Below, in pieces: positions 14,433-34,155 of a DNA stretch of 64,000 nucleotides. Source of the DNA: Haplodiscus bocki (Eukaryota). Numbering within the stretch: the stretch's first letter is position 1; each line of letters begins with the position of its first letter. Position numbers and translations under genes: made by a program. The DNA lies in NCBI GenBank assembly GCA_965655095.1, contig OZ296649.1, forward strand, positions 94,674,001-94,738,000, written 5' to 3'. The notes beneath the pieces were generated by a model. The model did no database searches and was not told the DNA's origin. It worked only from the letters and a program-made list of their open reading frames with translations.

Positions 14433-14625
14433 TGTACCTAAAAGAGATAAAAAATTATAACTGAAAACTTCATATTTAGACAGAGGATTCGGTTAAAACA
14501 TATTTTACTTTCACCACTTTACAAATTCAACACTTCTGTTCATCTGTTCAGTACTGTGAGCAGGTAGTCCTCTATTCACAGCTCCCAATGCTAGTGACTT
14601 CTTTCACTGCAAGTGTTACTGGACC

Positions 14626-17480
14626 TCACTGCAACGTCATCTGAGTTGGTCTCAACATGAATTTTCTTTTCTCCCAGCACTTGTCCAGCCTTGATTTGAA
14701 TGTAGTGGTGTTAACGGATTCGATAAACTCTCTAGGGAGGTTGTTCCACTCTTTCACCACCATCTGTGTGAAGAAATGCTTCCTAAGGCTAGTTCGACTT
14801 TTATTCATTTTCAGCTTCAATGCGTGGCCTTTGGTCCTATTGTGCCCCTCACGGGTCAGCAGATTTGTCGTCACAGATTGATCGTACCGAGTTGTTGGTA
14901 AGCATTTTGAAGACTTCAATCATATCTCCTCTCAAGCGTCTATATGCTAAGGTTGGCATGCCAAGTTTTTTCAGTCTCTCTTCGTAAGATAGGTCTTTTA
15001 ACTCATGTACACGTTTTGAAGCCCTTCTTTGCACATTCTCGATGAGGTTTTGGAGTTTGACTGACGTGGGGTTCCATACAGAAGTGGCGTACTCTAGGTG
15101 CGGTCTAACAATGCCTCGGAAGAGGAACCTGAATTTCAAAATATCCAATTGAAAGGTCCGTTTGATGAGGCCAACCAATCGATTGGCTTTATTGACTTTA
15201 TTCACAATGTGTTTTTCGAATTTCAGGTCTGTGTCAAATGTCACTACTAAGTCCGTCTCAGTATTATCGCTTGAGATCGGTAGTAGTTTCCCTCGCTCGG
15301 CGTAGTACTCTCGTTCAAGCTTCTTGGCTCTTCCAAACTTTAGTATCTTTGCCTTTTTCGGATGAAACGGCAGCAGCCATTTTTTGCTCCAATCTTCAAG
15401 CCTGTAGAGGTCATTTTGAAGCGATTCACCATCTTCCTTACAGTTCACCTCTTGGTAGATCTTTGTATCATCTGCGAACATCCATGCTTCATTCTCAACA
15501 GCTGCAGGTAGGTCGTTTATGAAGATCACAAAAAGAAGTGGCCCTAGAACGCTTCCTTGCGGGACTCCACTCAAGACTAGATTTTTGGACGATTTTTGAC
15601 CGTTGACAGCCACATGTTGCTTCCTGTTTGTTAGGAAAGTTTCTATCCATCGGTATAACTTTCCTCGAATTCCGTATGACCAGATCTTTGCCATCAGTCT
15701 CCTATATGGAACCTTATCAAAGGCTTTTTGGAAGTCACAATAAACGCAGTCAATGCCTCCGCCTCTATCAAGAATCTGTGTCCACTCTTCTAAGACTTTC
15801 AGCAATTGTAGACTCGTCGATCTTCCTTTCACGAAGCCATATTGTCTATCAGAAATCAAGTTGTTCGACGTCATGTGGGAAATGATATCATCTCTGATAA
15901 TGCTTTCTAGTACTTTACATGCGATGCATGTTAGGCTGACCGGTCGATAGTTCTCCACTTTCTTTTTGTCACCTTTCTTGAAGAGTGCTGTCACCCTCGC
16001 CTCCTTCCAGTCCCCGGGTAGCTCGCTTTTAGCAATGGTGCTTAAAAAAACGATCTGCAGTGGTTCAGTCAAAACTTCTGACAGTTCGGCAAGCACATGA
16101 GGATGGATTTCGTCAAAGCCCGGTGACTTTGTCCTGTTTAGTTCTGCCAACTTCTTTCTGATGGCTGATTCAGTTATGAGGGGCTCCTCAATGTATGAGT
16201 CGACAACAAATTTGTCAATTTCCGGGGGAGGGGTTTTCTCTTCTACAAAAACACTGCTGAAGTAGGTATTCAAGACTTCAGCCTTTCTGGTGTCTGAGGA
16301 TACTACCTCTCCGTCTTCCACGACGAGGTCACTTATGCCAGTTCTGGCTTTAACTTTTGAGTTCACAAAGGTTCAAAATCTCTTCGGGTTTCGTTTTGCT
16401 TCCCGGGCAATTTCGTCTTCAATTTCTCTAGCTTTGGACCTTGTTCGACTCCGGATGTAATTTCTCGCTCTACAGAACTCGTTGTAAGCTGTTTTTGTTT
16501 TGACTCTGAGGTATTTTCTCCAGAGGCTGTTCTTCTTTCGGATTTGTTGTAAGAGGTCTTTATCCAAGGGAACCGAAAACTGTTTTGTGGATCCGGAAAT
16601 GGCTTTTGGCAAACTTTTCTACTGCTGCGCTGATTCTTTTACAAGATTTCATGCTTCGTTGACGCTTGGGGCAGTAGAGAGTACATCAACCCAGTGGTTG
16701 TTTGACAGTACCTCGCGCATGCTTTCGTAGTCTCCCTTAGAATACTTCGATCTTGTTCCTTTTTTGCAGCGTGTTCTTTCCACCTGGGAGAGTTCGAAAG
16801 AAATCACCGAATGGTCACTCTTTCCAAAAGGAGCTTGGCACTGCATGTCGTCGATCTCTGTATCTGCATCCGTGAAGACAAGATCAAGAATGCTAGGGTC
16901 ATCAGATCCTCTGCCTCTTGTTGCAAATTGGACGTGTTGGTGCCAGAAGCAGTCCCTTACCAATTCAGTGAATGAGTGCTCGTTACTGTTCTCACTAAGC
17001 GGTGTCCAGTTCAAGGACCAATCAATTTTCGGGAAGTTGAAATCTCCTACGATAACTTCGTGCGTGAAATTCATGTGATACAGCTCTAAGAGTGTTCATT
17101 AAGGCCTGTTGCTCTTGGGTATCTGAATTCCAGTGACGATAGACGCACCCGAACAAGATTTTTTTCTTTTTTTCCGTTACAAAGTTGAACAAGAATAGTG
17201 TCTTCTGGGCATCCGTTGATCTCAACTCGACTAGACTGAAGCCCAATATCCTGCCTAACGTATACTATTGTACCTCGATGTTCCTTGTTGTTAATTTGTT
17301 TGCTGTAGAATGCGTCATATCCTTCAAAAGCGATATCTGCTTCCTCCAACACAAAGCCATGCTTTTTTGGTTTTACTTCCATCAGGCCGAAAACATCCGG
17401 CTTCTCACTTACTAGCCTTGCACTGATTTCCTCCTTTTTGTTTGTCATCGCATCAGTATTGGAAAAAAGAAACTTCAAGG
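14626..17480 (-). pseudogene. CR1 ORF2: AP endonuclease plus reverse transcriptase (disrupted)
   Basis: APE motifs LKFLFSN, FGLMEVKPK, VIVGDFNFPKIDW, LDLVFT, SDH. RT motifs NYRPVSLT, DFQKAFDKV, SGVPQGSVLGPLLF, FADDTK. C-terminal RTKGHALKL...RKHFFTQ..V.EWN.LP. Several frameshifts, and TGA stops at 16649 and 16373 where Trp would be expected. Confidence 0.95.
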
Positions 17481-18512
17481 ATTGTCGACGAAGGCACCGT
17501 CTAGGCTCTCCGCTGACAGTTTCTCTTTCCGCTTCAGTTTCTGTACCTCTAGTCTGTTCGGAGGTCCTCTCATTCTGTACATGTAGTTTTTTTGCATTCT
17601 CTCCATCTTTGTTTTCGGCCTCTTCAATTTTCAACTTGATCTGCTTCCTCAGATCTTGCGAGAGGTCGTATGAAACGCTGATTGAAGCGAATGATTTGTC
17701 TGCTGCTCTCAACTTTCTCAAATTTCTGAAAAGTAAGTCCCGATCCTCCTTGGAAGGCAATACAATCTTCAGTGGTCTTGAACTCACTCGTTCTGCAGTA
17801 GTACCGTCGCTGTCCTTTGATGTTTTCTTTGCTCCAAGTCTGATTGCTTTTGTTGGTTTGAGGTCACCAATACCTAGTAAGTCTTCGGTGAGCTGTTGGA
17901 AAAACTTGATGTCATCTCCAGCTCTCGCACTGGCCTCCGATTTGTCACTCTCAGGTACTCGATGAAGGATGACGTTTTTTCCCGTTTTTCTTGATCTGCT
18001 TGCTCCAGTCTTTCGTTCTCAATCGTCTCTTTCATGATGGTTCCCAAACCTTTCACCAAGGGAGCATTCCGTTGGGTAACTTCGGACCAGCTCTGTGCGC
18101 TTTTTCGGTCTTCTGAAAGTAAGTTTTCAAGTTTAACTGCAAGGTTTTGTTGGAAAAGTGACAGTTTATCTTCAATCAGCTTCGTGTTGGTGTCTCTAAT
18201 CTCATCGAGTTTGTCTTCCATGACCTTTGCAACAATCGTTTCCTGCGCCTTAGCGTCAATTTGCTTCTCGTCTTTCAACAACCGTTCCATACCCTTCGTT
18301 TCGCAAGATTTGCACAGCCACACCAGTCCAGAGGTTTTTGACATGGCCATCAAGATGCTTGATGGTAATCCTGAGCAGTTACCTGCGTGGTACCATGAGT
18401 TGCACAGAATACATGCTACCGAGCCGTCTTTACATTCACCTGCGCATGCACCACAAGGGTACTTGGTCGAAGTCAATCTCGTATTGTGATTATGACTCAT
18501 GATGTTCGGCAT
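17475..18512 (-). pseudogene. CR1 ORF1: PHD finger, coiled coil and C-terminal ORF1 domain (two 1-nt frameshifts)
   Basis: C4HC3 PHD finger CGAC...CILCNSWYHAGNC...WLCKSC, a coiled coil, and EKREKNVILHRVPES...RPLKIVL...ISVSYDLS...YMYRMRGPP after correcting indels in A-runs near 17978 and 17590. Confidence 0.88.
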
Positions 18513-18624
18513 ATTATGGCGGAAATCAGAATTGCTAGGAGATTCTCGCGCCAACAGAGATCAGACCCGAGGCACTGAGCAAGCTCGCGCCAACAGAGAT
18601 CCTTCTCTCGAGGCACTGAGGAGA

Positions 18625-19239
18625 TCAGAGAGCTCGAATTAGAGGACTACCTGCGTTTCTTTTCTGGAAGCGTTGTCGCTGTCGCTGATTTGGCCGGATG
18701 TTCTTTTTCTTCTTCACCTGTTGGGCAACTGTGATGTTGGATGATAGCACTTCTTTAATATGGTCTGTAACGGCTTGCAATACCTTCAATTCCGTTGTAA
18801 CTTTTGGATGGACTTTTCGGAGGTCAGATTCGAATTCGTTGTCCGTCAAGTCAACCTTCGATTCGATGTCGATGATGTCAATGCCGGTTTCTTTGAGTGC
18901 TGTCAACACGTTATCAGTGTCGTTTCGTTGTATGTGAACTATTGCTGTGATGCGTGATCTCAGCGATACTAAGGTTTGGATAAACTCTACAATGGGACAC
19001 GGTTGGAAGTCGTTTTTTTTTTCGTGGCTGTTGATTGTATTATTGACAGCGTCGTGCCAGATAACCAATCCACTTGCTCCAGTAAGTTCTCCTTGGAGCC
19101 ACTCTTGGGCAAGTTTGCACTTGCTTCGAGGGTGGAAGGAAAGGCCTCCCTCGGCGTCGATGCGACTGAAAAGAGTCTCTGATCGAAAAGCTGTCTTGCA
19201 GTTTCTCAAAGAGCTGGCACCAATCAGTGTAAACACCAT
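18625..19239 (-). CDS. LINE-borne SGNH/GDSL-hydrolase-like (esterase-type) ORF, 204 aa, intact
   Basis: Motif blocks LIGASSL, GGLSF, LVIWHDAVNN and DLRKVHP follow the order of SGNH blocks I, II, III and V, and there is a basic K/R tail. Clearly homologous to 23272-23925. Lies inside the TSD-bounded element. Confidence 0.7.
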   Translation of the reverse strand: MVFTLIGASSLRNCKTAFRSETLFSRIDAEGGLSFHPRSKCKLAQEWLQGELTGASGLVIWHDAVNNTINSHEKKNDFQPCPIVEFIQTLVSLRSRITAIVHIQRNDTDNVLTALKETGIDIIDIESKVDLTDNEFESDLRKVHPKVTTELKVLQAVTDHIKEVLSSNITVAQQVKKKKNIRPNQRQRQRFQKRNAGSPLIRAL

Positions 19240-19358
19240 AAGCAGACTTCACCCGTCTACGGCTAGAGCGACGGGACTTGGCATAGAAGAATAAGTCCAG
19301 GCTCTAGCGCGCAATTTATCTATAAACAAACAACGCGGTGAAAAAGGAAGGGAAAAAT

Positions 19359-19418
19359 CTATTTAATAAGTTTATCACAACAATTAGGCTATTTAATAAG
19401 TTTATCACAACAATTAGG
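19359..19418 (-). other. Two tandem copies of a 30-nt candidate spliced-leader sequence at the LINE 5' end
   Basis: Minus strand cAG|CCTAATTGTTGTGATAAACTTATTAAATAG x2, immediately inside the TSD. The last 14 nt recur at the 5' end of a different LINE (23186-23199). Confidence 0.7.
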
Positions 19419-20430
19419 CTGCACTTCAATAATCACTGACTCCAAAACAATAACTTCAACAAAAATTTGGATTCCGCCCTTCCGAGAGTCTCAAGGGCAA
19501 CCGGCTATACGAAGACATTTTGGTACTTCATGGTTTCAACTTCCTCTGCCACTGTTCAGCCTACCTCTTCGTTTACGTTGTAGGAAGTAGCGATACTGCG
19601 GCAGCTGGTGATATCCCATGCCAATAGCCTACCCACTTTCTGTTGTATGTCGCCTTTTGCCCAGCTGGGCTAAACACTGCATTGCTGCGTGGTATCGTCT
19701 AGTGGTTCGAGATCTTTGTTTTCCCAGACATCTGCTTTCGTGCCTTGCAAGGTGTTCTAAAATTTTGACTAATAATAAGTTTTGTGGCAATTAGAAACCT
19801 AATCAGGCGCTATAACTAAACTCAAATAGAAAACCATATTTTGTACATTGAACCACTTAAATTTTTAGGATTTCACGTGCTGGACCCTTAATATAGAACT
19901 CTAAGGGCACTGAAAACTTAGATTGGATAAAAAAAAACTAGCTAACATAATATGGGTGACAATAAATCAGAGTGGTAACATAAAGAGATAGCAACGTAAG
20001 ATGGCTGCGGCGAGTTTTGTTGAAGTGAAAAAGTCTATTCAGTTCATAAAAATGGAAATAGCTACCGCTACCATACAGCAACACACTGCCACAAAAAAAC
20101 CGAGATTCACACAGCAGCACCAAAAAAAACTACAACCCGAGCTCAACCTTTTATTTCCGCCCATACGTAGAAATGGAAAGCAAATAGTCCACTGAACGCG
20201 TGCTTTTCTTACGTTTACTTTCCAATTGAAAATGCCCGACGCTTCTGGATACAAAACTTTTATCAAACTACATCAAAGTTGCCGTACAAATTGACTGGAA
20301 TAGAAAAATTTCCAATTCTTACACAATGAGTTCTTTAAAAAAATATATGTATTCTCGAAAAACATTTTTTTTCAAAATCAATGAGAATGGCAAAAACGAT
20401 CTAGTCTGCGTATCTACTGGTATTATTTTC

Positions 20431-20550
20431 TGTTGCGAGAGAAAACAAGCTTCGTGTGTAAGCTTTAACTAACGTACACAATCTAAAAGCACATTAAGTA
20501 CGTACGGAACGCATAATAAAAAGATTCACAGTTCACAAAAACACGAAATT
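20431..20550 (-). repeat. Putative 3' LTR of the gypsy element
   Basis: Shares gagaaaa.aagct, aagctt.aactaacgtacacaat.taaaag and cggaacgcata with 36768-36905. Begins TGTTG on the + strand. An adjacent C-run at 20553 would be a PPT on the minus strand. Confidence 0.6.
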
Positions 20551-21748
20551 ATCCCCCAATAAAGTTTGATACTGAAATCGCTGAGTTAATTTCGTCATTT
20601 CGGATTGATCAGACTAGGGAGATTTTCCGAAGCGATGATTTTCGCAGCTGTACGGGACATTCTTTCGATTCCGCGAACGTTTCTCTGCCATTTGGACTGG
20701 CAAAAATTGGATTCTCATTTCGCTCCTGCTGAGGCTCCTTCGTCGACTGTTGACCATTGTCTTCGTCGGGTGTACACACTTGATTTTCGATTTCGCTGGC
20801 CGGGACTGGTGCTGCGGGCATCGTTGCTCTTTGGTCAGAATCAACAACGTCGGCGGAATTTGGTTATAAACGAGGGACGTCGCATTGCATTCTCCGGCTA
20901 TTCTCTTTCGATTGCACTTGGTTCGAGTCTAGTATTTCGCTGCACCCTGGGGCCAATGTCTTTGTGGAAACGGTGTCAATGCGACCGCTAGGGGAAGCGA
21001 TTCGGGTTTAATGAGGGCCAACAACCTCGAAAATCGTCACAGGTCAAGAAACTGGGTCCTCCTTGCCACGTAAATATTTCCGCAAGAATGCGTGATTCCC
21101 AATGGTGGGACACGGAGGCTAACACTAACCAAGTTCACGATGTCCCTCAAATTTGATGTCTTGAGTGTGGTGTTTCATCAGATGCGGTACACAACATGGT
21201 TCTGATGATAGATAAGGCATCTGGAAGTACGATTTCTCAGAAATAAGGATTCAATAGACGACTCTCCAGGGAAATGGCGGTCTTGAATTTTGTTAGCTTG
21301 AACCTCTCGCATTGACCTTTACCTCATGGATTATATGGAGTTCTCATAGAGTGTGGAATTTCAATGTCCGTGCAGAAACTTTCGAACTCCGCAGACAAAA
21401 TTTGAATTCCACGGTCGCTATGAATAATTGATGGAGTTCCCAATACAGGTAAAAATTTCCGAAGATGTAGTTTCGGTTGAAGTGACCTCCTCGATACTAA
21501 ACACCAAGGAGATACGACTGTGATCATAGATTGTTCTCGATGGACATCGGTTTTCAGTCCCATATAAAAGTCTCCTCGGACCGACGAGGTCGATAGATAA
21601 CCGTTCCAAGGGACGAGTAGCTCCAACAACGGCAGAGGGTAACTTCGGTTTGAAGAAGGTTAGTTTAATCTCTTGACATGTCCGGCACTCAGATTTAGAT
21701 GACTTGACCCCGGCTAGAGACAAGGCGTAACTGTGCCGTCATAAAATT

Positions 21749-23185
21749 CTGCTGCTGCAAATGAATTCTTACTAAAATCAGTCAATATCTTGCTAAATAT
21801 TGTAAGAAGCTTAATCGACTTGAACAAAAGAATTAAATTTGCTGACTATGTCTACAGACTTAACTTTGACGTTTTACTTTTAACTGAGACATGGCTCACT
21901 TTTGACATAAAAAAGGCAGAACTGTTTCTTCCCGATTATGATATTATACGAAGCGAAAGACCAACTGAATGAGACGAACTGAATCAGATACAAAGCGATA
22001 AACCAACTGAATCAGATGCGTCTCGCCATGGCGGTGTAACGATAGCTGTGAAGAAAACAATCAAAACCGAGGAAGTTAGTGTGGCTGAATTACCCTTATC
22101 AGTTCAATCTCCACATCGCGTTACTAGGCTAATTGGCTTAGAACCTTTGTACATCGCAGTTCTCTACAATCCTCCAGCGGGAAGCAAATACCAGATATTT
22201 ATTGCGGATTTACAAAAAATATTCCGCTTCCTTGGGAAAACGTGCCCCAAGCGTCTCCTCTTTACCGGTGACTTCAACATGCCTCACACAAGTTGGAGTA
22301 CCTTTGATTCTGTCAACGAATATGAAAAGCAGCTCGCTTCGCTTCTGTTCGATTTGAAATTAAAACAATATATCGATTTCATTACAACAAAGAAAAGCTG
22401 TTTGATCTTGTGTTTTGCAATGAAGGTTCAATCATTATTGATACAAAGCTGTGCGGAAATCTGTCTCGGTTCTCAGACTATTTTCCCATCACGATCAATA
22501 TGTCCATAAATAGTAAAGTTGCAGAGAAATTATCAACGGGATACTTTAGTTACTGCAATTGTGATTTCCAGGCATTGAATGAGGATATCATTGCCAATCC
22601 ATCCGAACCGTACTCCTATAGCAATGTGGATGTCAATACGAATCTTTGGTATGAATGGATACTTAAATTGATCGAAAAACATGTTCCTATCCGAACTAAA
22701 AACAGACAACTACTGCCTCCATGGACATCTGATGAGACATCACATCACATGAACAAGATAAAAACTGAGCGAAGAAAATTACAGAAAAGGGGACTCTGTT
22801 CGTCTGAAAAACTGAAAAAGCTAACCGAAGAATGTGATCAATTGCAAACAATTGATAGAGTCGAATACGAACAAAGGCTTTTTGCCAGCAGACATAAAGG
22901 ACGAATTTTCAAATAGTTGAAAAGCCTGAAAAAAGACAGTCTACCGCCAGTCATAAAATCTGAAAGCTTGAAAAAGGATGCTAGCACAGATCTCGAGAAA
23001 GCAAACCTTTTTAAAAATTACTTTACTACGGTAGTGACTAATGACGATTATGAATACTTCGAACCAAGCGAACAGCATAATTTTGGGGAAAATGACATCA
23101 TAATAACGGAAGATTTAATAAAAGCGGAGCTAAAGTCACTTAACGTCTCGAAGAGCAGAGGTCACGATTCGATACCACCCATATT
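21749..23185 (+). mobile_element. L2/CR1-group LINE copy A, 5' part (APE domain and linker), 5'-truncated
   Basis: LLNIVRSL, LLLTETWL, YDIIRSER, HGGV, LYNPP, FTGDFNMP motifs. Breaks off at ..KSRGHDSIPPI (ATATT, 23181-23185). Confidence 0.9.
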
Positions 23186-23199
23186 AACTTATTAAATAG
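23186..23199 (+). other. Partial candidate spliced-leader sequence (3' 14 nt) at the 5' end of LINE copy B
   Basis: AACTTATTAAATAG is an exact match to the 3' end of the 30-mer at 19359-19418, and it sits exactly at the insertion junction. Confidence 0.65.
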
Positions 23200-23271
23200 T
23201 TTCAGTGCCTGATTGAAAAGACCGGATACTGGAGAGCCCTTACGTGAAAGGGATTCTAGAAGCCGGCATTT

Positions 23272-23925
23272 ATGGTTTATGTAATTGGAGCAAGTTCGCT
23301 GAACGCTACAATCGGAAGGGTACCCTACAATGTGAGGAGAGAATTATTTGGCAGAAGCTACAGCCTTGGAGGGCTCAGTTTCAACTGGAACGCTAAAAAC
23401 CCATTGAAGGTGTTACAAAATCTACTGACAGGAAGGGGTGTACTTGCCAGAAAGTATAAAGTGATAATTTGGCACGACATTATAAACAATTCGATTAGCA
23501 AACATCGAAGCAACAACTACAGGGCCATAAGTGTTGAAAATTTACTCCAAATACTGCGTGACTTCAGTCATAGAATCGAAGCCGTAGTATATTGTAGACG
23601 TGAAGGAGCCCCTGACAATTTTCGCAAATTGTTGGAGAGCAAAATTACCATACTAGACGTTAAATCAAACCTTCTATCCCACCGCAACAGTAAAGATTTC
23701 ATAGTTCTGCACGACCTGAAACAAACCCACCCGTCCACTGAACTCGAAGCCCGATTGCTCTCAACTGTTTGGCGGCACAGAAAGAACTTAAAATTTTTTT
23801 ATAAGAATAACAAGAAGAAGTCGAAACCGTGCGAACCAAAGAAGCAAAACAAGCCATCAAAAAAAGAAAGAGAAAAAGCTAAACCGAAGAAAGAAAAGCT
23901 GTCTTCATCTTGTGTTTTGCAATGA
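23272..23925 (+). CDS. LINE ORF1, SGNH/GDSL-hydrolase-like, 217 aa (last ~10 codons come from the deletion junction)
   Basis: VIGASSL, SLGGLSF, VIIWHDIINN and DLKQTHP motifs plus a lysine-rich tail. Homologous to 18625-19239. Confidence 0.72.
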   Translation: MVYVIGASSLNATIGRVPYNVRRELFGRSYSLGGLSFNWNAKNPLKVLQNLLTGRGVLARKYKVIIWHDIINNSISKHRSNNYRAISVENLLQILRDFSHRIEAVVYCRREGAPDNFRKLLESKITILDVKSNLLSHRNSKDFIVLHDLKQTHPSTELEARLLSTVWRHRKNLKFFYKNNKKKSKPCEPKKQNKPSKKEREKAKPKKEKLSSSCVLQ

Positions 23926-24685
23926 AGATTCAATCATCAATGATACAAAGCTGTGCGGAAATCTGTCTCGGTTCTCTGACCATTCTCCCATCACGATCAA
24001 TATGTCCATAAATAGTAAAGTTGCAGAGAAATTATCAACGGGATACTTTAGTTACTGCAATTGTGATTTCGATGCATTGAATGAGGATATCATTGCCAAT
24101 CCATTCGAACCGTACTCCTATAGCAATGTGGAGGTCAACACGAATCTTTGGTAAGCATGGATAATTAAATTGATCGAAAAACATGTTCCTATCCGAACTA
24201 AAAACAGACAACTACTGCCTCCATGGACATCTGATGAGACATCACATCACATGAACAAGATAAAAACTGAGCGAAGAAACTTACAGAAAAAGGCACTCTG
24301 TACGTCTGAAAAGCTGAAAAAGCTAACCGAAGAATGTGATCCATTGCAAACGAATGTTGGAGTCGATTACGAAGAAAGGCTTTTTGCCAGCAGACATAAA
24401 GGACGACTTTTCAAATATTTGAAAAGCCTGAAAAAAGACATTCTAGCGCCAGTCATAAAATCTGAAAGCTTGAAAAGGGAAGCTAGCACAGATCTCGAGA
24501 AAGCAAACCTTTTTATTAATTACTTTACTACGGTAGTGACTGATGACGATTATGAATACCTCGAACGAAGCGAACGGCATAATTTTGGGGAAAATGACGT
24601 CATAAAAACGGAAGATTTAATAAAAGCAGAGCTAAAGTCACTTAACATCTCGAAGAACAGTGGTCACGATTCGATACCACCCAGA

Positions 24686-26237
24686 TTGCTTAAAAAATGC
24701 GGGGGAACAATCGCTACGTCACGTCGAAACTTGTTCAGTAATATCAAGCGATTGCGCAAATTTCCATCTGCATGGAAGACTGGAATTGTCAGTCCGATAT
24801 ACAAAGACGGTGACAAAAAAGAAGTTTCGAACTATGGGCCAGTTACTCTCATAAACATAATCTCAAAATCATTTGAAAAATTCACTTTTGCACCAATTTA
24901 CACTGCGTTTGCTGATTGGATAAGCAATTTCCAATTTGGTTTTAGGCCGAGACGTTCAGTTGTACTGCAATTACTATACAGTTCATCTCATATCTACTCA
25001 CACTTGAACTCGAGAGACTTTGTTAATTTATTTGTTTTATTTGATTTCTCTGCAGCGTTTGACAAAATAAAGCATAGTGTCCTGATGAAAAAGTTACTAC
25101 AAATTCCCATCTCCAAGGCTTAATTCGAACTGATTCAAGACTACTTATTAGGAAGAACACAGAAAGTGCGAATAGGTGACCAGTTATCGAATGAGCGGAC
25201 TGTAACATCTGGAGTACCACAGGGATCAGTATTGGGACCCTTACTCTTCTTGATATACATAAGCGATCTCCCCACTGTTGTTTTCTCATCGATGGCTTTA
25301 CTGTTTGCCGATGATTTAAAACTGATTTTCAATGGGAGAGCTGAACAAGAATCCTTAGGAAAACTTCAAATCGATTTACAAGCCCTTCACAACTGGAGTA
25401 TGCAAAATCATCTACTATTCAATTTGAAAAAGTGTTCAATCAGCAAATTTCAGTACGGTAGAAACAAGAACACTCCCCAAGGAGTTTGTTTTATCATGGA
25501 GGGTCGAAATTTAAACCACAAAAGCCTGGTTCGGGACGTCGGCCTGTTCATAGATCAATCACTAAACTGGAACGAGCATGTGAAAGTAAGAGTCGGAAAG
25601 GCAGCAAAATTGTTCTTTCTGTTAAGAAGAAGTACCATGCCGATCATTTGCACCCAAACTAAAGCCCATCTTTACCGATCAATAATAACAACGTCGTTTT
25701 TTTGCATCCGAATGCTGGCAACTAAGAAATACGAGTTTGAAAATCATTGAAAACTTCAATAAAAAGGTTGTGAAGTGGATTTGCGGAAATTGGGACTATA
25801 GGGATGCTTTGGTCCAATCGAATTTATTACCACCACTCTACTTTAGAGTCCTCAAAGACCTTTTACTCTTCAGTAACAATTTGGAAGGAAGACACGATGT
25901 AGAGTTTTCGAAAGAATTCAAAATCAGTAACAGTGGTAGAAGAAGACGTGTTGTGCTCCCAGACACTAGACATGAAATACAGAGGCAAAACTTTTGGTAC
26001 AGGACTGTATTCAGAATAAACGTCGTCCAAAGATTTTTTGATTTCTTCAACCCGGAGAATCTGAAGAAGAAACTGATTGAATATATGTGGATGTATTTTA
26101 ATAGACATTGGACTGAAAACAATCGCTGTACTTGGATTTTCATTTGTTCATGTGTAAACTGTCTTGCCAATCCTAGATCCTAGATTGTAACAGAGGGGTA
26201 AAATTCCCCAGTGGCATATCCACGAAGTTATAATAAT

Positions 26238-26308
<71 letters not shown>

Positions 26309-29300
26309 TAAAATTTTTTAAAAAATGCGGGGGATCAATCGCTACGTCCCTTCGAAACTTGTTCAGTAATATCAAGCGATTGCGCAAATTTCCATCTGCA
26401 AAGAAGACTGGAATTGTCAGTTCGATATTCAAAGACGGTGACAAAAGAGAAGTTTCGAACTGTAGGCCAGTTACTCTTCTAAACATAATCTCAAAATCAT
26501 TTGAAAAATTCACCTTTGCACCAACTTACACTGCGTTTGCTGAATGTATAAGCAATTTCAAATTTGGTTTTAGGCCGAGACGTTCAGTTGTACTGCAATT
26601 ACTATACAGTTTATCTCATATCTACTCACACTTGAACTCGAGAGACTTTGTTAATTTATTTGTTTTATTTGATTTCTCTAAAGCGTTTGACAAAATAAAG
26701 CATAGTATCCTGATGAAAAAGTTACTACAAATTCCCATCTCCAAGGCTTTATTGGAACTGATTCAAGACTACTTATTAGGAAGAACACAGGAAGTGCGAA
26801 TAGGTGACCAGTTATCGAATGAGCGGACTGTAACATCTGGAGTACCACAGGAATCGGTATTGGGACCATTACTCTTCTTGATATACATAAACGATCTCCC
26901 CACTGTTGTTTTCTCATCGATGGCTTTACCGTGTGCCGATGATTTAAAACTCATTTTCAATGGGAGAGCTGAACAAGAATCCTTAGGAAAACTTCAAATC
27001 GATATAAAAGCCCTTCACAACTGGAGTATGCAAAATCATCTACTATTCAATTTGAAAAAGTGTTCAATCAGCGAATTTCAGAACGGTAGAAATAAGAACA
27101 CTCTCGAAGGAGTTTGTTTTATTATGGAGGGTCGAAATTTAAACCACAAAAGCCTGGTTCGTGACGTCGGCTTGTTCATAGGGGAATCACTAAACTGGAA
27201 CGAGCATGTGGAAGTAAGAGTTGGAAAGGCAGCAAAATCGTTCTTTCTGTTAAGAATAAGAACCATGCCGATCATTTGCACCCAGGCTAAAGCCCATCTT
27301 TACCGATCAATAATAACAACGTAGTTTTTTGCATCCGAATACTGGCAACTAAGAAATACGATTTTCAAAATCATTGATAAATTCAATAAAAAGTTTCTAA
27401 AGTGGATTTGCGGAAATTGGGATTATAAGGATGCTTTGGTCCAATCGAATTTATTACCAACATTATACTTTAAAGTGCTTAAAGACCTTTTACTCTCCAG
27501 TAACTTTTTGGAAGGAAGACACGATGTAGATTTTTCGAAAGAATTCAAAATCACTAACAGTGGTAGAAGAAGACGTGTTGTGCTCCCAGACACTAGACAT
27601 GAAATACAGAGGCAAAACTTTTGGTACAGGACTGGTTTCAGAATAAACGCGGTCCAATGATCTTTTGATTTCTTCAACCCGGAGAATCTGAAGAAGAAAC
27701 TGATTGAATATATGTGGATGTATTTTAATAGACATTGGACTGAAAACAATCGCTGTACTTGGATTTTCATTTGTTTATGTGTAAACTGTCTTGCCAATCC
27801 TAGATCCTAGATTGTAACAGAGGGGTGAAGTTCCCCAGTAGCATATCCACGAAGTTAAAGTAATAATAATAATAATAATAATAGTAATAATGATATTTTT
27901 TAAAAAATGCGGGGGATCAATCGCTACGTCCCATCGAAACTTGTTCAGTGATATCAAGCGATTGCGCAAATTTCTATCTGCATGGAAGTCTGGAATTGTC
28001 AGTCCGATATACAAAGACGGTGACAAAAGTGAAGTTTCGAACTGTAGGCCAGTTACTTTTCTAAACATAATCTCAAAATCATTTGAAAAATTCATCTTTG
28101 CACCAATTTACACTGCGTTTGCTGAATGTATAAGCAATTTCAATTTTGGTTTTAGGCCGAGACGTTCAGTTGTACTGCAATTACTCTACAGTTTATCTCA
28201 TATCTACTCACACTTGAACTCGAGAGACTTTGCTAATTTATTTGTTTTATTTGATTTCTCTAAAGCGTTTGACAAAATAAAGCATAGTATCCTGATGAAA
28301 AAGTTACTACAAATTCCCATCTCCAAGGCTTTATTGGAACTGATTCAAGACTACTTATTAGGAAGAACACAGAAAGTGCGAATAGGTGACCAGTTATCGA
28401 ATGAGCGGAATGTAACATCTGGAGTACCACAGGGATCGGTATTGGGACCATAACTCTTCTTGATATACATAAACGGTCTCCCCACTGTTGTTTTCTCATC
28501 GATGGCTTTACTGTTTGCCGATGATTTAAAACTGATTTTCAATGGGAGAGCTGAGCAAGAATCCTTAGGAAAACTTCAAATCGATATACAAGCCCCTCAC
28601 AACTGGAGTATGCAAAATCATCTACTATTCAATTCGAAAAAGTGTTCAATCAGCGAAATTCAGAACGGTAGAAATAAGAACACTCTCGAAGGAGTTTGTT
28701 TTATTATGGAGGGTCCAAATTTAAACCACAAAAGCCTGGTTCGTGACGTCGGCCTGTTCATAGATGAATCACTAAACTGGAACGAGCATGTGAAAGTAAG
28801 AGTTGGAAAGGCAGCAAAACCGTTCTTTCTGTTAAGAAGAAGTACCATGCCGATCATTTGCACCCAGACTAAAGCCCATCTTTACCGATCAATAATAACA
28901 ACGCAGTTTTTTGCATCCCATTGCTGGCAACTAAGGAATACGAGTTTCAAAATCATTGAAAAATTCAATAAAAAGGTTCTAAAGTGGATTTGCGGAAATT
29001 GGGATTATAAGGATGCTTTGGTCCAATCGAATTTATTACCAACATTATACTTTAAAGTGCTTAAAGACCTTTTACTCTCCAGTAACATTTTGGAAGGAAG
29101 ACACGATGTAGATTTCTCGAAAGAATTCAAAATCATTAACAGTGGTAGAAGAAGACGTGTTGTGCTCCCAGACACTAGACATGAAAGACAGAGGCAAAAC
29201 TTTTGGTACAGGACTGGATTCAGAATAAACGTCGTCCAAAGATTTTTTGATTTCTTCAACCCGGAGAATCTGAAGAAGAAACTGATTGAATATATGTGGA

Positions 29301-32300
29301 TGTATTTTAATATACATTGGACTGAAAACAATCGCTGTACTTGGATTTTCATTTGTTTATGTGTAAACTGTCTTGCCAATCCTAGATCCTAGATTGTAAC
29401 AGAGGGGTAAAATTCCCCAGTGGCACATCCACGAAGTTAAAGTAATAATAATAGGAATAATAATAATAATAATGATATTTTTTAAAAAATGCGGGGGATC
29501 AATCGCTACGTCCCATCGAAACTTGTTCAGTGATATCAAGCGATTGCGCAAATTTCTATCTGCATGGAAGTCTGGAATTGTCAGTCCGATATACAAAGAC
29601 GGTGACAAAAGTGAAGTTTCGAACTGTAGGCCAGTTACTTTTCTAAACATAATCTCAAAATCATTTGAAAAATTCATCTTTGCACCAATTTACACTGCGT
29701 TTGCTGAATGTATAAGCAATTTCAAATTTGGTTTTAGGCCGAGACGTTCAGTTGTACTGCAATTACTCTACAGTTTATCTCATATCTACTCACACTTGAA
29801 CTCGAGAGACTTTGTTAATTGATTTGTTTTATTTGATTTCTCTAAAGCGTTTGACAAAATAAAGCATAGTATCCTGATGAAAAAGTTACTACAAATTCCC
29901 ATCTCCAAGGCTTTATTGGAACTGATTCAAGACTACTTATTAGGAAGAACACAGGAAGTGCGAATAGGTGATCAGTTATCGAATGAGCGGAATGTAACAT
30001 CTGGAGTACCACTGGGATCGGTATTGGGACCATTACTCTTCTTGATATACATAAACGGTCTCCACACTGTTCTTTTCTCATCGATGGCTTTACTGTTTGC
30101 CGATGATTTGAAACTGATTTTCAATGGGAGAGCTGAGCAAGAATCCTTAGGAAAACTTCAAATCGATATACAAGCCCCTCACAACTGGAGTATGCGAAAT
30201 CATCTACTATTCAATTTGAAAAAGTGTTCAATCAGCGAATTTCAGAACGGTAGAAATAAGAACACTCTCGAAGGAGTTTGTCTTATTATGGAGGGTCGAA
30301 ATTTAAACCACAAAAGCCTGGTTCGTGACGTCGGCCTGTTCATAGATGAATCACTAAACTGGACCGAGCATGTGAAAGTAAGAGTTGGAAAGGCAGCAAA
30401 ACCGTTCTTTCTGTTAAGAAGAAGTACCATGCCGATCATTTGCACCCAGACTAAAGCCCATCTTTACCGATCAATAATGTCGTTTTTTGCATCCCATTGC
30501 TGGCAACTAAGGAATACGAGTTTCAAAATCATTGGAAAATTCAATAAAAAGTTTCTGAAGTGGATTTGCGGAAATTGGGATTATAAGGATGCTTTGGTCC
30601 AATCGAATTTATTACCACCACTCTACTTTAAAGTGCTTATAGACCTTTTACTCTCCAGTAACATTTTGGAAGGAAGACACTATGTAGATTTTTCGAAAGA
30701 ATTCAAAATCACTAACAGTGGTAGAAGAAGACGTGTTGTGCTTCTTGACACTAGACATGAAATACAGAGGCAAAACTTTTGGTACAGGACTGGTTTCAGA
30801 ATAAACGCCGTCCAATGATCTTTTGATTTCTTCAACCCGGAGAATCTGAAGAAGAAACTGATTGAAAATATGTGGATATATTTTAAAAGACATTGGACTG
30901 AAAACAATCCCTGTGCTTGGATTTTCATTTGTTTATGTGTAAACTGTCTTGCCAATCCTAGATCCTAGATTGTAACAGAGGGGTAAAATTCCCCAGTGGC
31001 ATATCCACGAAGTTATAATATTAATAATAATAACAATAATATTTTTTAAAAAATGCGGGGGATCAATCGCTACGTCCCTTCGAAACTTGTTCAGTAATAT
31101 GAAGCGATTGCGCAAATTTCCATCTGCATGGAAGACTGGAATTGTCAGTCCGATATACAAAGACGGTGACAAAAGAGAAGTTTCGAACTGTAGGCCAGTT
31201 ACTCTCCTAAATGTTATCTCAAAATCATTTGAAAAATTCATCTTTGCACCAATTTACACTGCGTTTGCTGATTGTATAAGCAATTTCCGATTTGGTTTTA
31301 GGCCGAGACGTTCGGTTGTACTGCAATTTTTATACAGTTTATCTCATATCTACTCATGTTTGAACTCGAGGAATTTGCTAATTTCTTTGTTTTATTTGAT
31401 TTCTCTAAAGCGTTTGACAAAATAAAGCATAGTATCTTGATGAAAATTTTACTACAAATTCCCATCTCCAAGGCTTTATTCGAACTGATTCAGGACTACT
31501 TAGTAGGAAGAACACAGAAAGTGCGAATAGGTGACCAGTTATCGAATGAGCGGACTGTAACATTGGGACCATTACTCTTCTTGATATAAATAAACGATCT
31601 CCCCACTGTTGTTTTCTCACCGATGGTTTTACTGTTTGCCGATGATTTGAAACCGATTCTCAATGGGAGAGCTGAACAAGAATCCTTAGGAAAACTTCAA
31701 ATCGATTTACAAGCCCTTCACAACTGGAGTATGCAAACAAATCTTGTATTCATATTGAAAAAGTTTTCAATCAGCGAACTTCAGTACGGTGGAAATAAGA
31801 ACACTCCCGAATGAGTTTGTTTTATTGTGGAGGGTCGAAATTTAAACCACAAAAACTTGGTTCGTGACCGCGGCCTGTTCATAGATGAATCACTAAACTG
31901 GAACTAGCTAGTGAACGTAAGAGTTGGAAAGGCAGCAAAATCGTTCTTTCTCTTAAGAAGAAGTACCATGCCGATCATTTGCACCCAGACTTAAGCGCAT
32001 CTTTACCGATCAATAATAACAACATCGTTACTTTTGCATCCGATTGCCGGGAACTAAGAAACCCGAATTTCAAAATCATTGAAAACTTCAATAAAATGGT
32101 TCTGAAGTGGACTTGCGGAAATTGGTTTAAAAGATGCTTTGGTCCAATTCATTTATTACCACCACTCTACTTTAAAGTGCTTAAAGACCTTTTACTCTTC
32201 AGTAACATTTTGGAAGGAAGACACAATGTAGATTTTTCGAAAGAATTCAAAATCACTAACAGCGGTAGAAGAAGACGTGTTGTTCTTCCAGACACTAGAT

Positions 32301-34155
32301 ATGAAATACAGAGGCAAAACTTTTGGTACAGGACTGGATTCAGAATAAACGTCGTCCAAAGATCTTTTGATTTCTTCAACGCGGAGAATCTGAAGAAATT
32401 GATTGAATATATGTGGATGTATTTTAATAGACATTGGACTGAAAACAATCCCTGTACTTGGATTTTCATTTGTTTATGTGTAAACTGTCTGGCCAATCCT
32501 AGATCCTAGATTGTAACAGAGGGGTGAATTTCCCCCGTGGCATATCCACGAAGTTAAAGTAATAACAATAATAATATTAATAATAATATTATTTTTTAAA
32601 AAATGCGGGGGATCAATCGCTACGTCCCTTCGAAACTTGTTCAGTAATATCGAACGATTGCACAAATTTCCATCTGCATGGAAGACTGGAATTGTCAGTC
32701 CGATATACAAAGACGGTGACAAAAGAGAATTTTCGAACTGTAGGCCAGTTACTCTCCTAAACATAATCTCAAAATCATTTGAAAAATTCATCTTTGCACC
32801 AATATACACTGCGTTTGCTGATCGTATAAGCATTTTCCGATTTGGTTTTAGGCCGAGACGTTCGGTTGTACTGCAATTATTATACAGTTTATCTCATATC
32901 TACTCACATTTGAACTCGAGGACTCTGTTAATTTCTTTGTTTTATTTGATTTCTCTAAAGCGTTTGACAAAATAAAGCATAGCATCTTGATGAAAAATTT
33001 ACTACAAATTCCCATCTCCAAGGCTTTATTCGAACTGATTTAAGACTACTTAGTAGGAAGAACACAGAAAGTGCGAATAATTGACCAGTTATCGAATGAG
33101 CGGACTGTAACATCTGGAGTACCACAGGGATCGGTATTGGGACAATTACTCTTCTTGATATAGATAAACGATCTCGCCACTGTTGTTTTCTCATCCTTGG
33201 TTTTACTGTTTGCCGATGATTTAAAACGGATTCTCAATGGGAGATCTGAACAAGAATCCTGAGGAAAACTTCAAATCGATTTACAAGCCCTTCACAACTG
33301 GATTATGCAAACAAATCTAATATTCAGTTTGAAAAAGTGTTCAATCAGCGAATTTCAGTACGGTAAAAATAAGAACACTGCCGATGTAGTTTGTTTTTTT
33401 ATAGGTGGTCGAAATTTAGACCACAAAAATCTGGTTCGTGACCGCGGCCTGTTCATAGATGAATCACTAAACTGGAACTAGCTAGTGAACGTAAGAGTTG
33501 GAAAGGCAGCAAAATCGTTCTTTCTCTTAAGAAGAAGTACCATGCCGATCATTTGCACCCAGAGTTAAGCCCATCTCTACCGATCAATAATAACAACGTC
33601 GTTACGTTTTGCATCCGATTGCTGGGAACTAAGAAATACGAATTTCAGAATCATTGAAAACTTCAATAAAATGGTTCTGAAGTGGACTTGCGGAAATTGG
33701 TTTATAAAGATGCTTTGGTCCAATCAAATTTATTACCACCACTCTACTTTAAGGTGCTTAAAGACCTTTTACTCTTTTGTAACATTTTGGAAGGAAGACA
33801 CGATGTAGATTTTTCGAAAGAATTCAAAATCACTAACAGCGGTAGAAGAAGACGTGTTGTGCTTCCAGACACTAGATATGAAATACAGAGGCAAAATTTT
33901 TGGTACAGGACTGGATTCAGAATAAACGTCGTCCAAAGACCTTCTGATTTCTTCAACCCGGAGAATCTGAAGAAGAAACTGATTGAATATATGTGGATGT
34001 ATTTTAATATACATTGGACTGAAAACAATCCCTGTACTTGGATTTTCATTTGTTTATGTGTAAACTGTCTTGCCAATCCTAGATCCTAGATTGTAACAGA
34101 GGGGTAAAGTTCACCAGTGGCATATCCACGAAATTATAATAATAATAATAATAAT
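24686..34155 (+). repeat. Tandem array of six ~1.58-kb LINE 3' halves (RT domain, 3'UTR, (TAA)n tail)
   Basis: Units end at about 26310, 27892, 29473, 31038, 32588 and 34155. Units 2-6 all restart at (at)attttttaaaaaatgcgggggatcaatcg and end CVNCLANPRS* followed by the 3'UTR and (TAA)n. Each has its own stops and indels. Confidence 0.97.

What the first reader, a model, noticed from the sequence alone, without database searches (positions are those of the whole stretch)
19359..23199. Two different LINE families begin with the same AG-terminated leader: candidate spliced-leader (SL) trans-spliced retrotransposons
Seen: the 5' end of the CR1 element, defined independently by its CACTTC TSD, reads CAG-[CCTAATTGTTGTGATAAACTTATTAAATAG]x2 on the minus strand (19421-19359). 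The 5' end of copy B of the other LINE family, defined independently as the point where it interrupts copy A, starts with AACTTATTAAATAG (23186-23199), exactly the last 14 nt of that 30-mer. After the shared terminal AG the two 5'UTRs show no similarity I can see. The families also differ in ORF layout and 3' tail. Known: metazoan SL exons are short, often AT-rich and frequently end in AG; LINE integration copies the RNA up to its 5' end and often truncates there. Inference: the 30-mer is the host SL exon. These LINE RNAs are trans-spliced and integrate with the leader, so they could use host read-through transcription and obtain a capped 5' end without their own promoter. This differs from NeSL/SLACS/CRE elements, which insert into SL RNA genes; here the leader is carried at dispersed insertions of APE-type LINEs.
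Basis: partly seen in the sequence, partly recalled or inferred. Interest (0 to 1): 0.92.

Follow-up and report, generated by a model that had tools for sequence, protein, structure and literature searches.

The report
LINEs capped with host spliced leader
In this acoel-worm genome many jumping-gene (LINE) families start with the worm's own spliced-leader exon, so their RNAs were trans-spliced like host mRNAs before being copied back into DNA, and the inserted leader can itself be used again as a splice acceptor.

Summary

- **The 30-mer is the host spliced leader (SL).** It matches the SL published for the acoel Symsagittifera roscoffensis. This genome has 673 exact SL+GTAAGT genes in 5S-rRNA-linked tandem arrays. 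The gene has a donor inside stem-loop I, an Sm-like site and a 3' hairpin.
- **Every CR1-like copy examined carries it.** All 40 copies that reach the 5'UTR have the SL at the 5' end, each with unrelated flanks. It sits at UTR position 1 in 32 copies, after an internal AG at position 40 in 6, and at position 15 in 1.
- **One copy is a chimera.** It reads SL + a single-copy host exon (AG before it, GT after it at its source locus) + UTR position 1. This indicates cis-splicing onto the same acceptor.
- **The leader is widespread.** At least 23 of 30 randomly sampled dispersed SL copies are LINE 5' ends, from about 10 families. Three families show alternative SL junctions, each directly after an AG.
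- **Not shown.** No RNA runs were available. Ongoing trans-splicing and independence from a promoter are inferred.
- **Prior work.** Two flatworm papers suggest SL-bearing retrotransposons in passing, and dinoflagellate SL-relic retrogenes are the established analogue.
- **Earlier scan notes.** First-stage notes from other windows of this genome raise the same idea.

Verdict: a new variant of a known kind, of moderately high interest.

The parts
19422..19427 (-). 5' copy of the target-site duplication GAAGTG of the CR1-like LINE
   Evidence: The same hexamer lies at the 3' end.
19419..19421 (-). One extra C, then AG. The AG is the first two bases of the 32-nt leader as encoded in the SL RNA gene.
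   Evidence: The SL gene reads ...ttttAG+30-mer. AG precedes the 30-mer in 32 of 37 CR1 copies and in 24 of 32 SL copies in the random sample.
19389..19418 (-). Upstream copy of the 30-nt spliced-leader core
   Evidence: Identical to the published SL.
19359..19388 (-). Second copy of the spliced-leader core. It ends at the AG that abuts the LINE 5'UTR.
   Evidence: Same junction in 32 of 40 genomic copies.
14537..19358 (-). Body of the CR1-like LINE.
- 5'UTR 19358-19240.
- ORF 18625-19239.
- PHD-like ORF 17874-18554.
- APE 16649-17787.
- RT 14849-16366.
- (TGAACAGA)x2 3' end.
The frames are broken.
   Evidence: Pfam; 3' end.
19320..19321 (-). Internal AG (UTR positions 38-39, in ...tttgtttatAG). 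Six other genomic copies use it as an alternative leader acceptor.
   Evidence: L091-L096 have AG+SL joined to ATAAATTG.
14531..14536 (-). 3' copy of the target-site duplication GAAGTG
21751..23185 (+). Copy A of the second LINE family. It is 5'-truncated (start approximate), carries the C-terminal part of the APE, and is interrupted at 23185.
   Evidence: Pfam; self-BLAST; depth step and loose end at 21750.
23186..23199 (+). The last 14 nt of the spliced leader (leader core 17-30), at the 5' end of copy B
   Evidence: A sister copy at C2:78148837 has the full 30-mer at the same junction.
23200..26317 (+). Copy B.
- 5'UTR starting tttcAG (23200-23205). Other copies use that AG as an alternative acceptor.
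- ORF 23272-23925.
- Internal deletion of the APE region at about 23891.
- RT.
- (AAT)n tail 26230-26314.
   Evidence: L030 and two other copies have SL joined after tttcAG.
26318..34158 (+). Resumed 3' part of copy A, amplified into five further 1.58-kb tandem units

Best explanation
**What it is.** The 30-mer, with a preceding AG (32 nt in all), is the host spliced-leader exon of this acoel.

**Shown.**
- RNAs of many APE-type LINE families received this leader by SL trans-splicing at AG acceptors in their 5' regions.
- Full-length target-primed reverse transcription then wrote the leader into each new dispersed copy.

**Inferred.**
- The integrated leader ends in AG and has a CTAAT branch-point-like motif about 25 nt upstream. 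It may therefore act as a portable 3' splice site.
- A copy transcribed from any upstream promoter could then be cut at the leader/UTR boundary. A fresh capped leader (trans) or a host exon (cis) would be joined there, regenerating the same mRNA.
- The tandem leader in the window would arise when the AG at the start of an integrated leader is used as acceptor, or by a template jump.

The confidence given applies to the shown core. The portable-acceptor, promoter-free cycle is rated separately in the section on the most novel reading.
For: **SL identity**
- The 30-mer is contained in the published S. roscoffensis SL; 30.2% of that species' genes are trans-spliced.
- There are 673 exact SL+GTAAGT matches, all in arrays on C9 and later contigs.
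- The fold puts the donor in stem-loop I, followed by a UUAUUUGA Sm-like site and a 3' hairpin (z = -3.6).
- A 5S rRNA gene lies in the same repeat unit.

**Dispersed copies**
- The 30-mer has 1648 matches with up to 2 mismatches.
- In 30 random copies the upstream flanks are all different, and the downstream sequences fall into about 10 families.
- At least 23 of the 30 are LINE 5' ends with a PHD ORF1 plus APE, or an RT.

**CR1 family**
- All 40 copies examined carry the SL: 32 at UTR position 1, 6 after the internal AG at position 40, 1 at position 15, and 1 chimera.
- None extends 5' with element sequence beyond the SL.

**Alternative junctions, all after an AG**
- tatAG| in the CR1 family.
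- tttcAG| in family B.
- tttgAG| in family F4.

**Chimera L098**
- It reads SL + 118 nt + UTR position 1.
- The 118 nt is a single-copy sequence at C1:48325740-48325860 (97% identity).
- At that locus it is preceded by AG and followed by GT.

**Age of the family**
- The copies are 94-100% identical and form a star-like tree.
Against: - No RNA run was found, and the four runs laid behave like DNA. No transcript evidence was obtained here.
- Because the SL is encoded in every copy, inheritance as ordinary DNA cannot be separated from renewal by trans-splicing for most copies.
- One junction (L097, position 15) does not follow an AG.
- Upstream SL relics in L100 and L033-36 keep the 5' part of the leader. 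Splicing cannot produce that pattern.
- The source copy predicted by a read-through model for L094 was not found.
- Species identity rests on the SL match alone. The assembly (1.5 Gb) is larger than the published S. roscoffensis genome (about 0.93 Gb measured).
Confidence: 0.85

Rival explanations
1. The leader was captured by trans-splicing once, or a few times, per family. It is now inherited as the first 32 nt of an ordinary 5'UTR and transcribed from an internal promoter that starts at the first leader base. Ongoing trans-splicing plays no part in propagation.
For: - Every copy encodes the SL, so inheritance alone would explain most of the data.
- The star-like tree fits one master lineage.
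- Some SL substitutions are shared by pairs of copies.
- From my own knowledge, the Ascaris SL sequence is itself an intragenic promoter element of its gene.
Against: - Two junction types (positions 1 and 40) occur on bodies with no diagnostic differences.
- The L098 chimera shows splicing at the SL/UTR boundary.
- Alternative AG junctions occur in three families.
- Shared SL variants do not co-segregate with body substitutions.
Confidence: 0.2
2. The leader was added by the reverse transcriptase jumping from the 5' end of the LINE RNA onto SL RNA or an SL-bearing mRNA, not by splicing.
For: - Upstream relics that keep the 5' part of the SL (L100, L033-36) fit template jumps.
- So do composites such as L063: SL + a 465-nt single-copy piece + AG-SL-CR1.
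Against: - The SL always ends exactly at the exon/donor boundary, with no SL-intron sequence.
- The element-side junction is the same in 32 copies.
- The recurrent alternative junctions all follow an AG.
Confidence: 0.04
3. These are NeSL/SLACS-like site-specific insertions into SL RNA genes that were later dispersed, or the 30-mer is a conserved LINE 5' motif unrelated to the SL.
For: - An earlier scan report (s1-364264) describes a LINE in this genome that targets the first 17 nt of the SL gene.
- Relics of that length precede F2-family copies in L033-36.
Against: - Flanks upstream of the (A)G differ in every copy and never match the SL-gene upstream sequence.
- The endonuclease is APE-type.
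- The motif is identical across families whose RTs are 35% identical and whose UTRs are unrelated.
Confidence: 0.02

Closest known systems
Dinoflagellate DinoSL-relic retrogenes (PMC5585692, PMC6050394, PMC12014239)
   Same: - A host spliced leader is encoded in DNA at the 5' end of retroposed copies.
- Tandem leaders are read as repeated cycles of transcription, trans-splicing and retroposition.
   Different: - Here the tagged RNAs are mainly the LINEs themselves, as whole families, rather than host genes.
- The host is a bilaterian animal.
- The upstream leader in tandems is complete or 3'-shortened, not 5'-truncated.
SL sequences next to mobile elements in parasitic flatworms (Schistosoma mansoni, PMC5832876; 24 flatworm species, PMC12582326)
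   Same: Both papers suggest in passing that retrotransposon transcripts received the SL and were then integrated.
   Different: - Those loci were discarded by-products with partial leaders, and assembly error was offered as an alternative.
- Neither paper reports a family-level census, alternative acceptors or cis-spliced chimeras.
- The host phylum is different, and the SL is unrelated.
NeSL-1, SLACS, CZAR, CRE (SL-gene-specific LINEs)
   Same: LINEs associated with spliced-leader sequence.
   Different: - Those elements insert into SL RNA genes using a restriction-like endonuclease.
- These are APE-type elements at dispersed sites and carry the leader as part of their own cDNA.
R2 and L1Tc, which are co-transcribed with host RNA and freed by a 5' HDV-like ribozyme (PMC3185411, PMC3383444; R2 from my own knowledge)
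   Same: A LINE can depend on upstream transcription and define its 5' end by RNA processing.
   Different: - The processing proposed here is spliceosomal SL trans-splicing.
- That also supplies a cap.
- It leaves a host-derived tag in the DNA.
L1 5' transduction and chimeric retrocopies (my own knowledge)
   Same: Upstream host sequence or a second RNA is carried at the 5' end of new insertions (compare L098, L063, L094).
   Different: Here the added pieces are themselves bounded by the SL and by splice sites.

Membership tests
Spliced-leader RNA gene / SL exon | The leader is followed by a GT splice donor in the gene | tested here: met
   673 exact matches to SL+GTAAGT; sequence shown.
Spliced-leader RNA gene / SL exon | The donor lies in a stem-loop, followed by a single-stranded Sm-like site and a 3' hairpin | tested here: met
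   The fold of L047:1494-1605 gives -27.3 kcal/mol and z = -3.6. A UUAUUUGA stretch lies between the two helices.
Spliced-leader RNA gene / SL exon | Tandem gene arrays, often linked to 5S rRNA | tested here: met
   The array on C9 from 72.47 Mb has a period of 1.7-2.6 kb. A 5S rRNA gene scores 117.8 bits in the unit.
Spliced-leader RNA gene / SL exon | The leader is found on the 5' ends of many unrelated mRNAs | not testable with these tools
   No RNA run was available. This is published for S. roscoffensis with the identical sequence.
SL-tagged retrocopies | The leader is encoded in DNA exactly up to its 3' AG, at the 5' end of a retroposed unit with unrelated flanks | tested here: met
SL-tagged retrocopies | Hallmarks of retroposition (TSD, 3' tail) | tested here: met
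   The window CR1 copy has a GAAGTG TSD and an 8-nt repeat tail. Not checked for the other copies, because their 3' ends were not fetched.
SL-gene-targeting LINEs (NeSL/SLACS/CRE) | Insertion at a fixed site inside SL RNA genes | tested here: not met
   The flanks are unique and do not match the SL-gene upstream sequence.
SL-gene-targeting LINEs (NeSL/SLACS/CRE) | Restriction-enzyme-like endonuclease | tested here: not met
   Exo_endo_phos (APE) domains are present.
CR1-clade LINE | APE plus RT, with a short tandem repeat rather than poly(A) at the 3' end | tested here: met
CR1-clade LINE | Placement of the RT within the CR1 clade in a phylogeny | not tested
   Only the architecture was assessed: a PHD-like ORF1 with E = 1e-3 in the window copy and 1e-5 to 1e-6 in sister families. 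I call it 'CR1-like'.

The most novel reading that the evidence does not exclude
Several acoel LINE families have given up a promoter of their own. The integrated spliced leader is a self-renewing, portable 3' splice site (CTAAT branch motif plus terminal AG). It turns any read-through host transcript into a capped, leader-bearing LINE mRNA. In sense orientation inside introns it also acts as a gene trap.
Probability: 0.4. Interest if true: 0.85.

Novelty: new variant of a known kind. Interest (0 to 1): 0.68.

Why it matters
- **An open question about LINEs.** How LINEs of the CR1/L2 type are transcribed and capped after insertion is poorly understood. Here the host's trans-splicing machinery appears to supply the capped 5' end. 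The DNA copies keep a record of it: the acceptor used, alternative acceptors, and host exons spliced on.
- **A natural tag.** The leader marks full-length, RNA-derived insertions in a bilaterian, as DinoSL does in dinoflagellates.
- **Possible cost to host genes.** Leader-bearing insertions could act as strong splice acceptors inside host genes.
- **A practical warning.** About half or more of the genomic SL matches are LINE 5' ends rather than SL genes. Genes with a genome-encoded SL will confuse SL-based annotation.

Tried and rejected
- **RNA evidence.** The look-up of sequencing runs returned no RNA run, only four runs from one study. Laid on 18700-23500 they show uniform DNA-like depth and only repeat the genomic picture. 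They did confirm the uninterrupted copy-A form across 23185.
- **Inherited versus renewed SL.** The tree of 30 CR1 copies is star-like. Pairs that share an SL variant share 0-2 body substitutions, which is background level. The six alternative-acceptor copies share no diagnostic sites. Neither test resolves the question.
- **A variant SL gene.** A gene for the recurrent ...CTTAATAAATAG form gave 0 matches with a GTAAGT donor. By my own rough estimate, the four-fold recurrence across two families is only marginally above chance.
- **Source locus for L094.** The 38-nt piece between its two leaders matched only L094 itself.
- **L063.** Its 465-nt piece has one other locus, C4:57940487 (99% identity). 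No CR1 copy was listed beside it, so 5' transduction and a template jump cannot be separated.
- **Limits reached.** Family-B copies were therefore scored only by coordinates, and no 3' ends or TSDs of other copies were read.
- **Rejected readings.** A NeSL-type insertion and a family-specific 5' motif were both rejected; see the rival explanations.
Full report
**1. Observation**

On the minus strand the window reads GAAGTG, C, AG, the 30-mer (19418-19389), the 30-mer again (19388-19359), then ATTTTTCCC.... On the plus strand AACTTATTAAATAG lies at 23186-23199, between ...cccatatt and tttcagtgcc.... The 14-mer occurs three times in the window against 0.06 expected.

The minus-strand element is a CR1-like LINE spanning 14537-19421.
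- Its ORFs match a PHD finger weakly, an APE endonuclease, and RVT_1 (2.6e-32).
- It ends in (TGAACAGA)x2.
- It is flanked by GAAGTG on both sides.

On the plus strand, 22386-23185 (copy A) is 94% identical to 23887-24687 (copy B).
- A's sequence resumes at 26318, after B's (AAT)n tail.
- A DNA contig carries the uninterrupted form across 23185.
- So B did insert into A, and B's first bases are the leader tail.

The RTs of the two elements are 35% identical.

**2. The 30-mer is the host spliced leader**

A full-text search for 22 nt of it found one work, the Symsagittifera roscoffensis genome paper. Its reconstructed leader contains the 30-mer exactly, and it reports 30.2% of genes as SL trans-spliced.

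In this genome the 30-mer has 1648 matches with up to 2 mismatches. Of these, 673 are exact matches to leader+GTAAGT, all in tandem arrays on C9 and later contigs.

The gene reads ...ttttAG + 30-mer + GTAAGT.... Folded, it shows three features:
- the 3' part of the leader pairs with the start of the intron;
- a single-stranded UUAUUUGA follows;
- a 10-bp hairpin follows that (z = -3.6).

A 5S rRNA gene (117.8 bits) lies 240 nt downstream in the same unit.

The AG before the 30-mer in the gene is also present before most dispersed copies: 32 of 37 CR1 copies and 24 of 32 in the random sample. I therefore take the leader to be 32 nt.

I cannot name the species. The leader is that of S. roscoffensis, but the assembly is larger than the published genome.

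**3. What lies next to the dispersed copies**

I read 30 exact copies on C1, taken in order of position.
- Upstream flanks are all different.
- Downstream sequences fall into about ten families, several with 2-8 members that share exactly the same junction.
- Representatives encode a PHD-finger ORF1 followed by an APE domain.
- At least 23 of the 30 are LINE 5' ends. Seven are unassigned.

**4. Census of the window's CR1 family**

A search with the 199 nt after the leader returned 40 places at 94-100% identity. I read the 5' ends of all 40 (L098 is the same place as L078).

| 5' structure | copies |
|---|---|
| Leader joined at UTR position 1 | 32 |
| AG+leader joined at position 40, right after ...tttgtttatAG | 6 (L091-L096) |
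| Leader joined at position 15, not after an AG | 1 (L097) |
| Chimera: leader + host exon + UTR position 1 | 1 (L098) |

No copy continues 5' with shared element sequence, so no common upstream promoter or outron segment exists. Substitutions are almost all private, giving a star-like tree. This indicates a recent burst from one source lineage.

**5. Evidence that splicing, not chance or template switching, made the junctions**

(a) The leader always stops at its exon boundary.

(b) Recurrent alternative junctions in three families each follow an AG.
- CR1: tatAG|.
- Family B: the window copy and C2:78148837 have leader|tttcag..., while L030, C1:120788580 and C1:121455016 have leader joined after tttcAG|.
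- Family F4: L027 has leader|tttgAG atattatg, while L022 and L026 have leader|atattatg.

(c) L098 reads AG+leader, then 118 nt, then CR1 UTR position 1, with no second leader.
- The 118 nt occurs at one other place, C1:48325740-48325860, at 97% identity.
- There it is preceded by AG and followed by GT, so it is a host exon.
- The simplest history has three steps. The exon was SL trans-spliced. Its donor was cis-spliced to the acceptor at the leader/UTR boundary of a CR1 copy lying downstream. The chimeric RNA was then retrotransposed.
- This indicates that the boundary created by an integrated leader works as a 3' splice site.

**6. Proposed mechanism**

Shown:
- The SL is the host leader.
- It sits on the 5' terminus of many LINE families at dispersed sites.
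- Junctions obey acceptor rules.
- One chimera requires cis-splicing to the same site.

Inferred:
- The integrated leader carries CTAAT about 25 nt before its terminal AG, so it could serve as a compact 3' splice site.
- Read-through transcripts would then be trans-spliced at that AG. This would restore a capped leader and allow propagation without an own promoter.

The tandem leader in the window, and a second tandem in L022 that has a 4-nt deletion, fit use of the AG at leader positions 1-2 as acceptor. That predicts the observed 30-nt rather than 32-nt period.

Other composites point to read-through from flanks, nested insertion or RT template jumps. I could not separate these.
- L094: leader + 38 nt + AG-leader-CR1.
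- L003: leader + 65 nt + leader.
- L063: leader + a 465-nt single-copy piece + AG-leader-CR1.
- Relics that keep only the first 14-18 nt of the leader: L100 and L033-36.

The 17-nt relics before F2-family copies agree with an earlier scan report of a LINE that targets that site in the SL (s1-364264).

**7. What is missing**

No RNA data could be reached. Ongoing trans-splicing of LINE RNA, read-through transcription and the cap are therefore untested here. An internal promoter starting at the first leader base remains a live rival (about 0.2).

**8. Comparison with what is known**

- Dinoflagellate retrogenes tagged with DinoSL relics are the established analogue.
- For animals I found two passing remarks. 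In Schistosoma mansoni, six SL exons were merged to transposable elements, with assembly error offered as an alternative. Across 24 flatworm species, 597 discarded loci with partial leaders lay near LTR and LINE elements.
- The acoel genome paper does not mention the phenomenon. Six full-text searches found no study of LINE families that propagate with the leader.
- NeSL, SLACS and CRE are a different thing: site-specific insertion into SL genes.
- R2 and L1Tc are functional parallels: co-transcription followed by 5' processing with a ribozyme.

I rate this a new variant of a known kind. First-stage notes from several other windows of this genome raise the same idea.

Noticed in passing
window 24690-34158 (+): Six head-to-tail units of about 1.58 kb, 90-95% identical to each other. 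Each runs from the point where copy B interrupts copy A to the (AAT)n tail. Unequal crossing-over between B's 3' part and A's resumed 3' part would explain the array. Repeated insertion into the same site of the family's own sequence is an alternative.
   Followed up: partly
L047-L060 (G000:C9:72.47-72.69 Mb and beyond): The SL RNA gene and a 5S rRNA gene share one tandem unit. The period varies in steps (about 1732, 1900, 2068, 2236, 2572 bp), which suggests an internal repeat of variable copy number. The 673 exact SL genes are split almost evenly between the two strands.
   Followed up: partly
L033-L036 (G000:C2:147.40-147.45 Mb); L100: A relic of the first 14-18 nt of the leader lies directly upstream of a complete AG+leader+LINE. 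In L033-36 the whole structure is repeated every 15.6 kb. This fits insertion into a pre-existing leader copy at the site that an earlier report gives as a LINE target.
   Followed up: no
L038-L045 (G000:C7:57.91-57.99 Mb): A leader-tagged unit with a 307-aa ORF and no Pfam match is repeated about every 9.5 kb. It may be a retrocopy that was later tandemly duplicated. The leader is followed by GT here by chance, not by the SL intron.
   Followed up: no
L097 (G000:C4:42079200-42079580): Two leader-bearing LINE 5' ends from different families lie head to head, about 30 nt apart.
   Followed up: no
L068, L090, L094, L097: The same leader variant (...CTTAATAAATAG) occurs on four copies from two LINE families. 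No SL gene with that variant and a GTAAGT donor was found. It may be a minor SL RNA variant, a mutational hotspot or chance.
   Followed up: partly
L069, L070, L071, L075, L083: Five CR1 copies have TG instead of AG before the 30-mer. Two of them also have T as the first base of the 30-mer. This may reflect a non-templated base added at the end of reverse transcription, or a second SL RNA start.
   Followed up: no
window 23887-23891 versus L030: Copy B lacks the stretch between the first ORF and the end of the APE domain that its relative L030 continues into. B is therefore an internally deleted, probably non-autonomous copy.
   Followed up: partly
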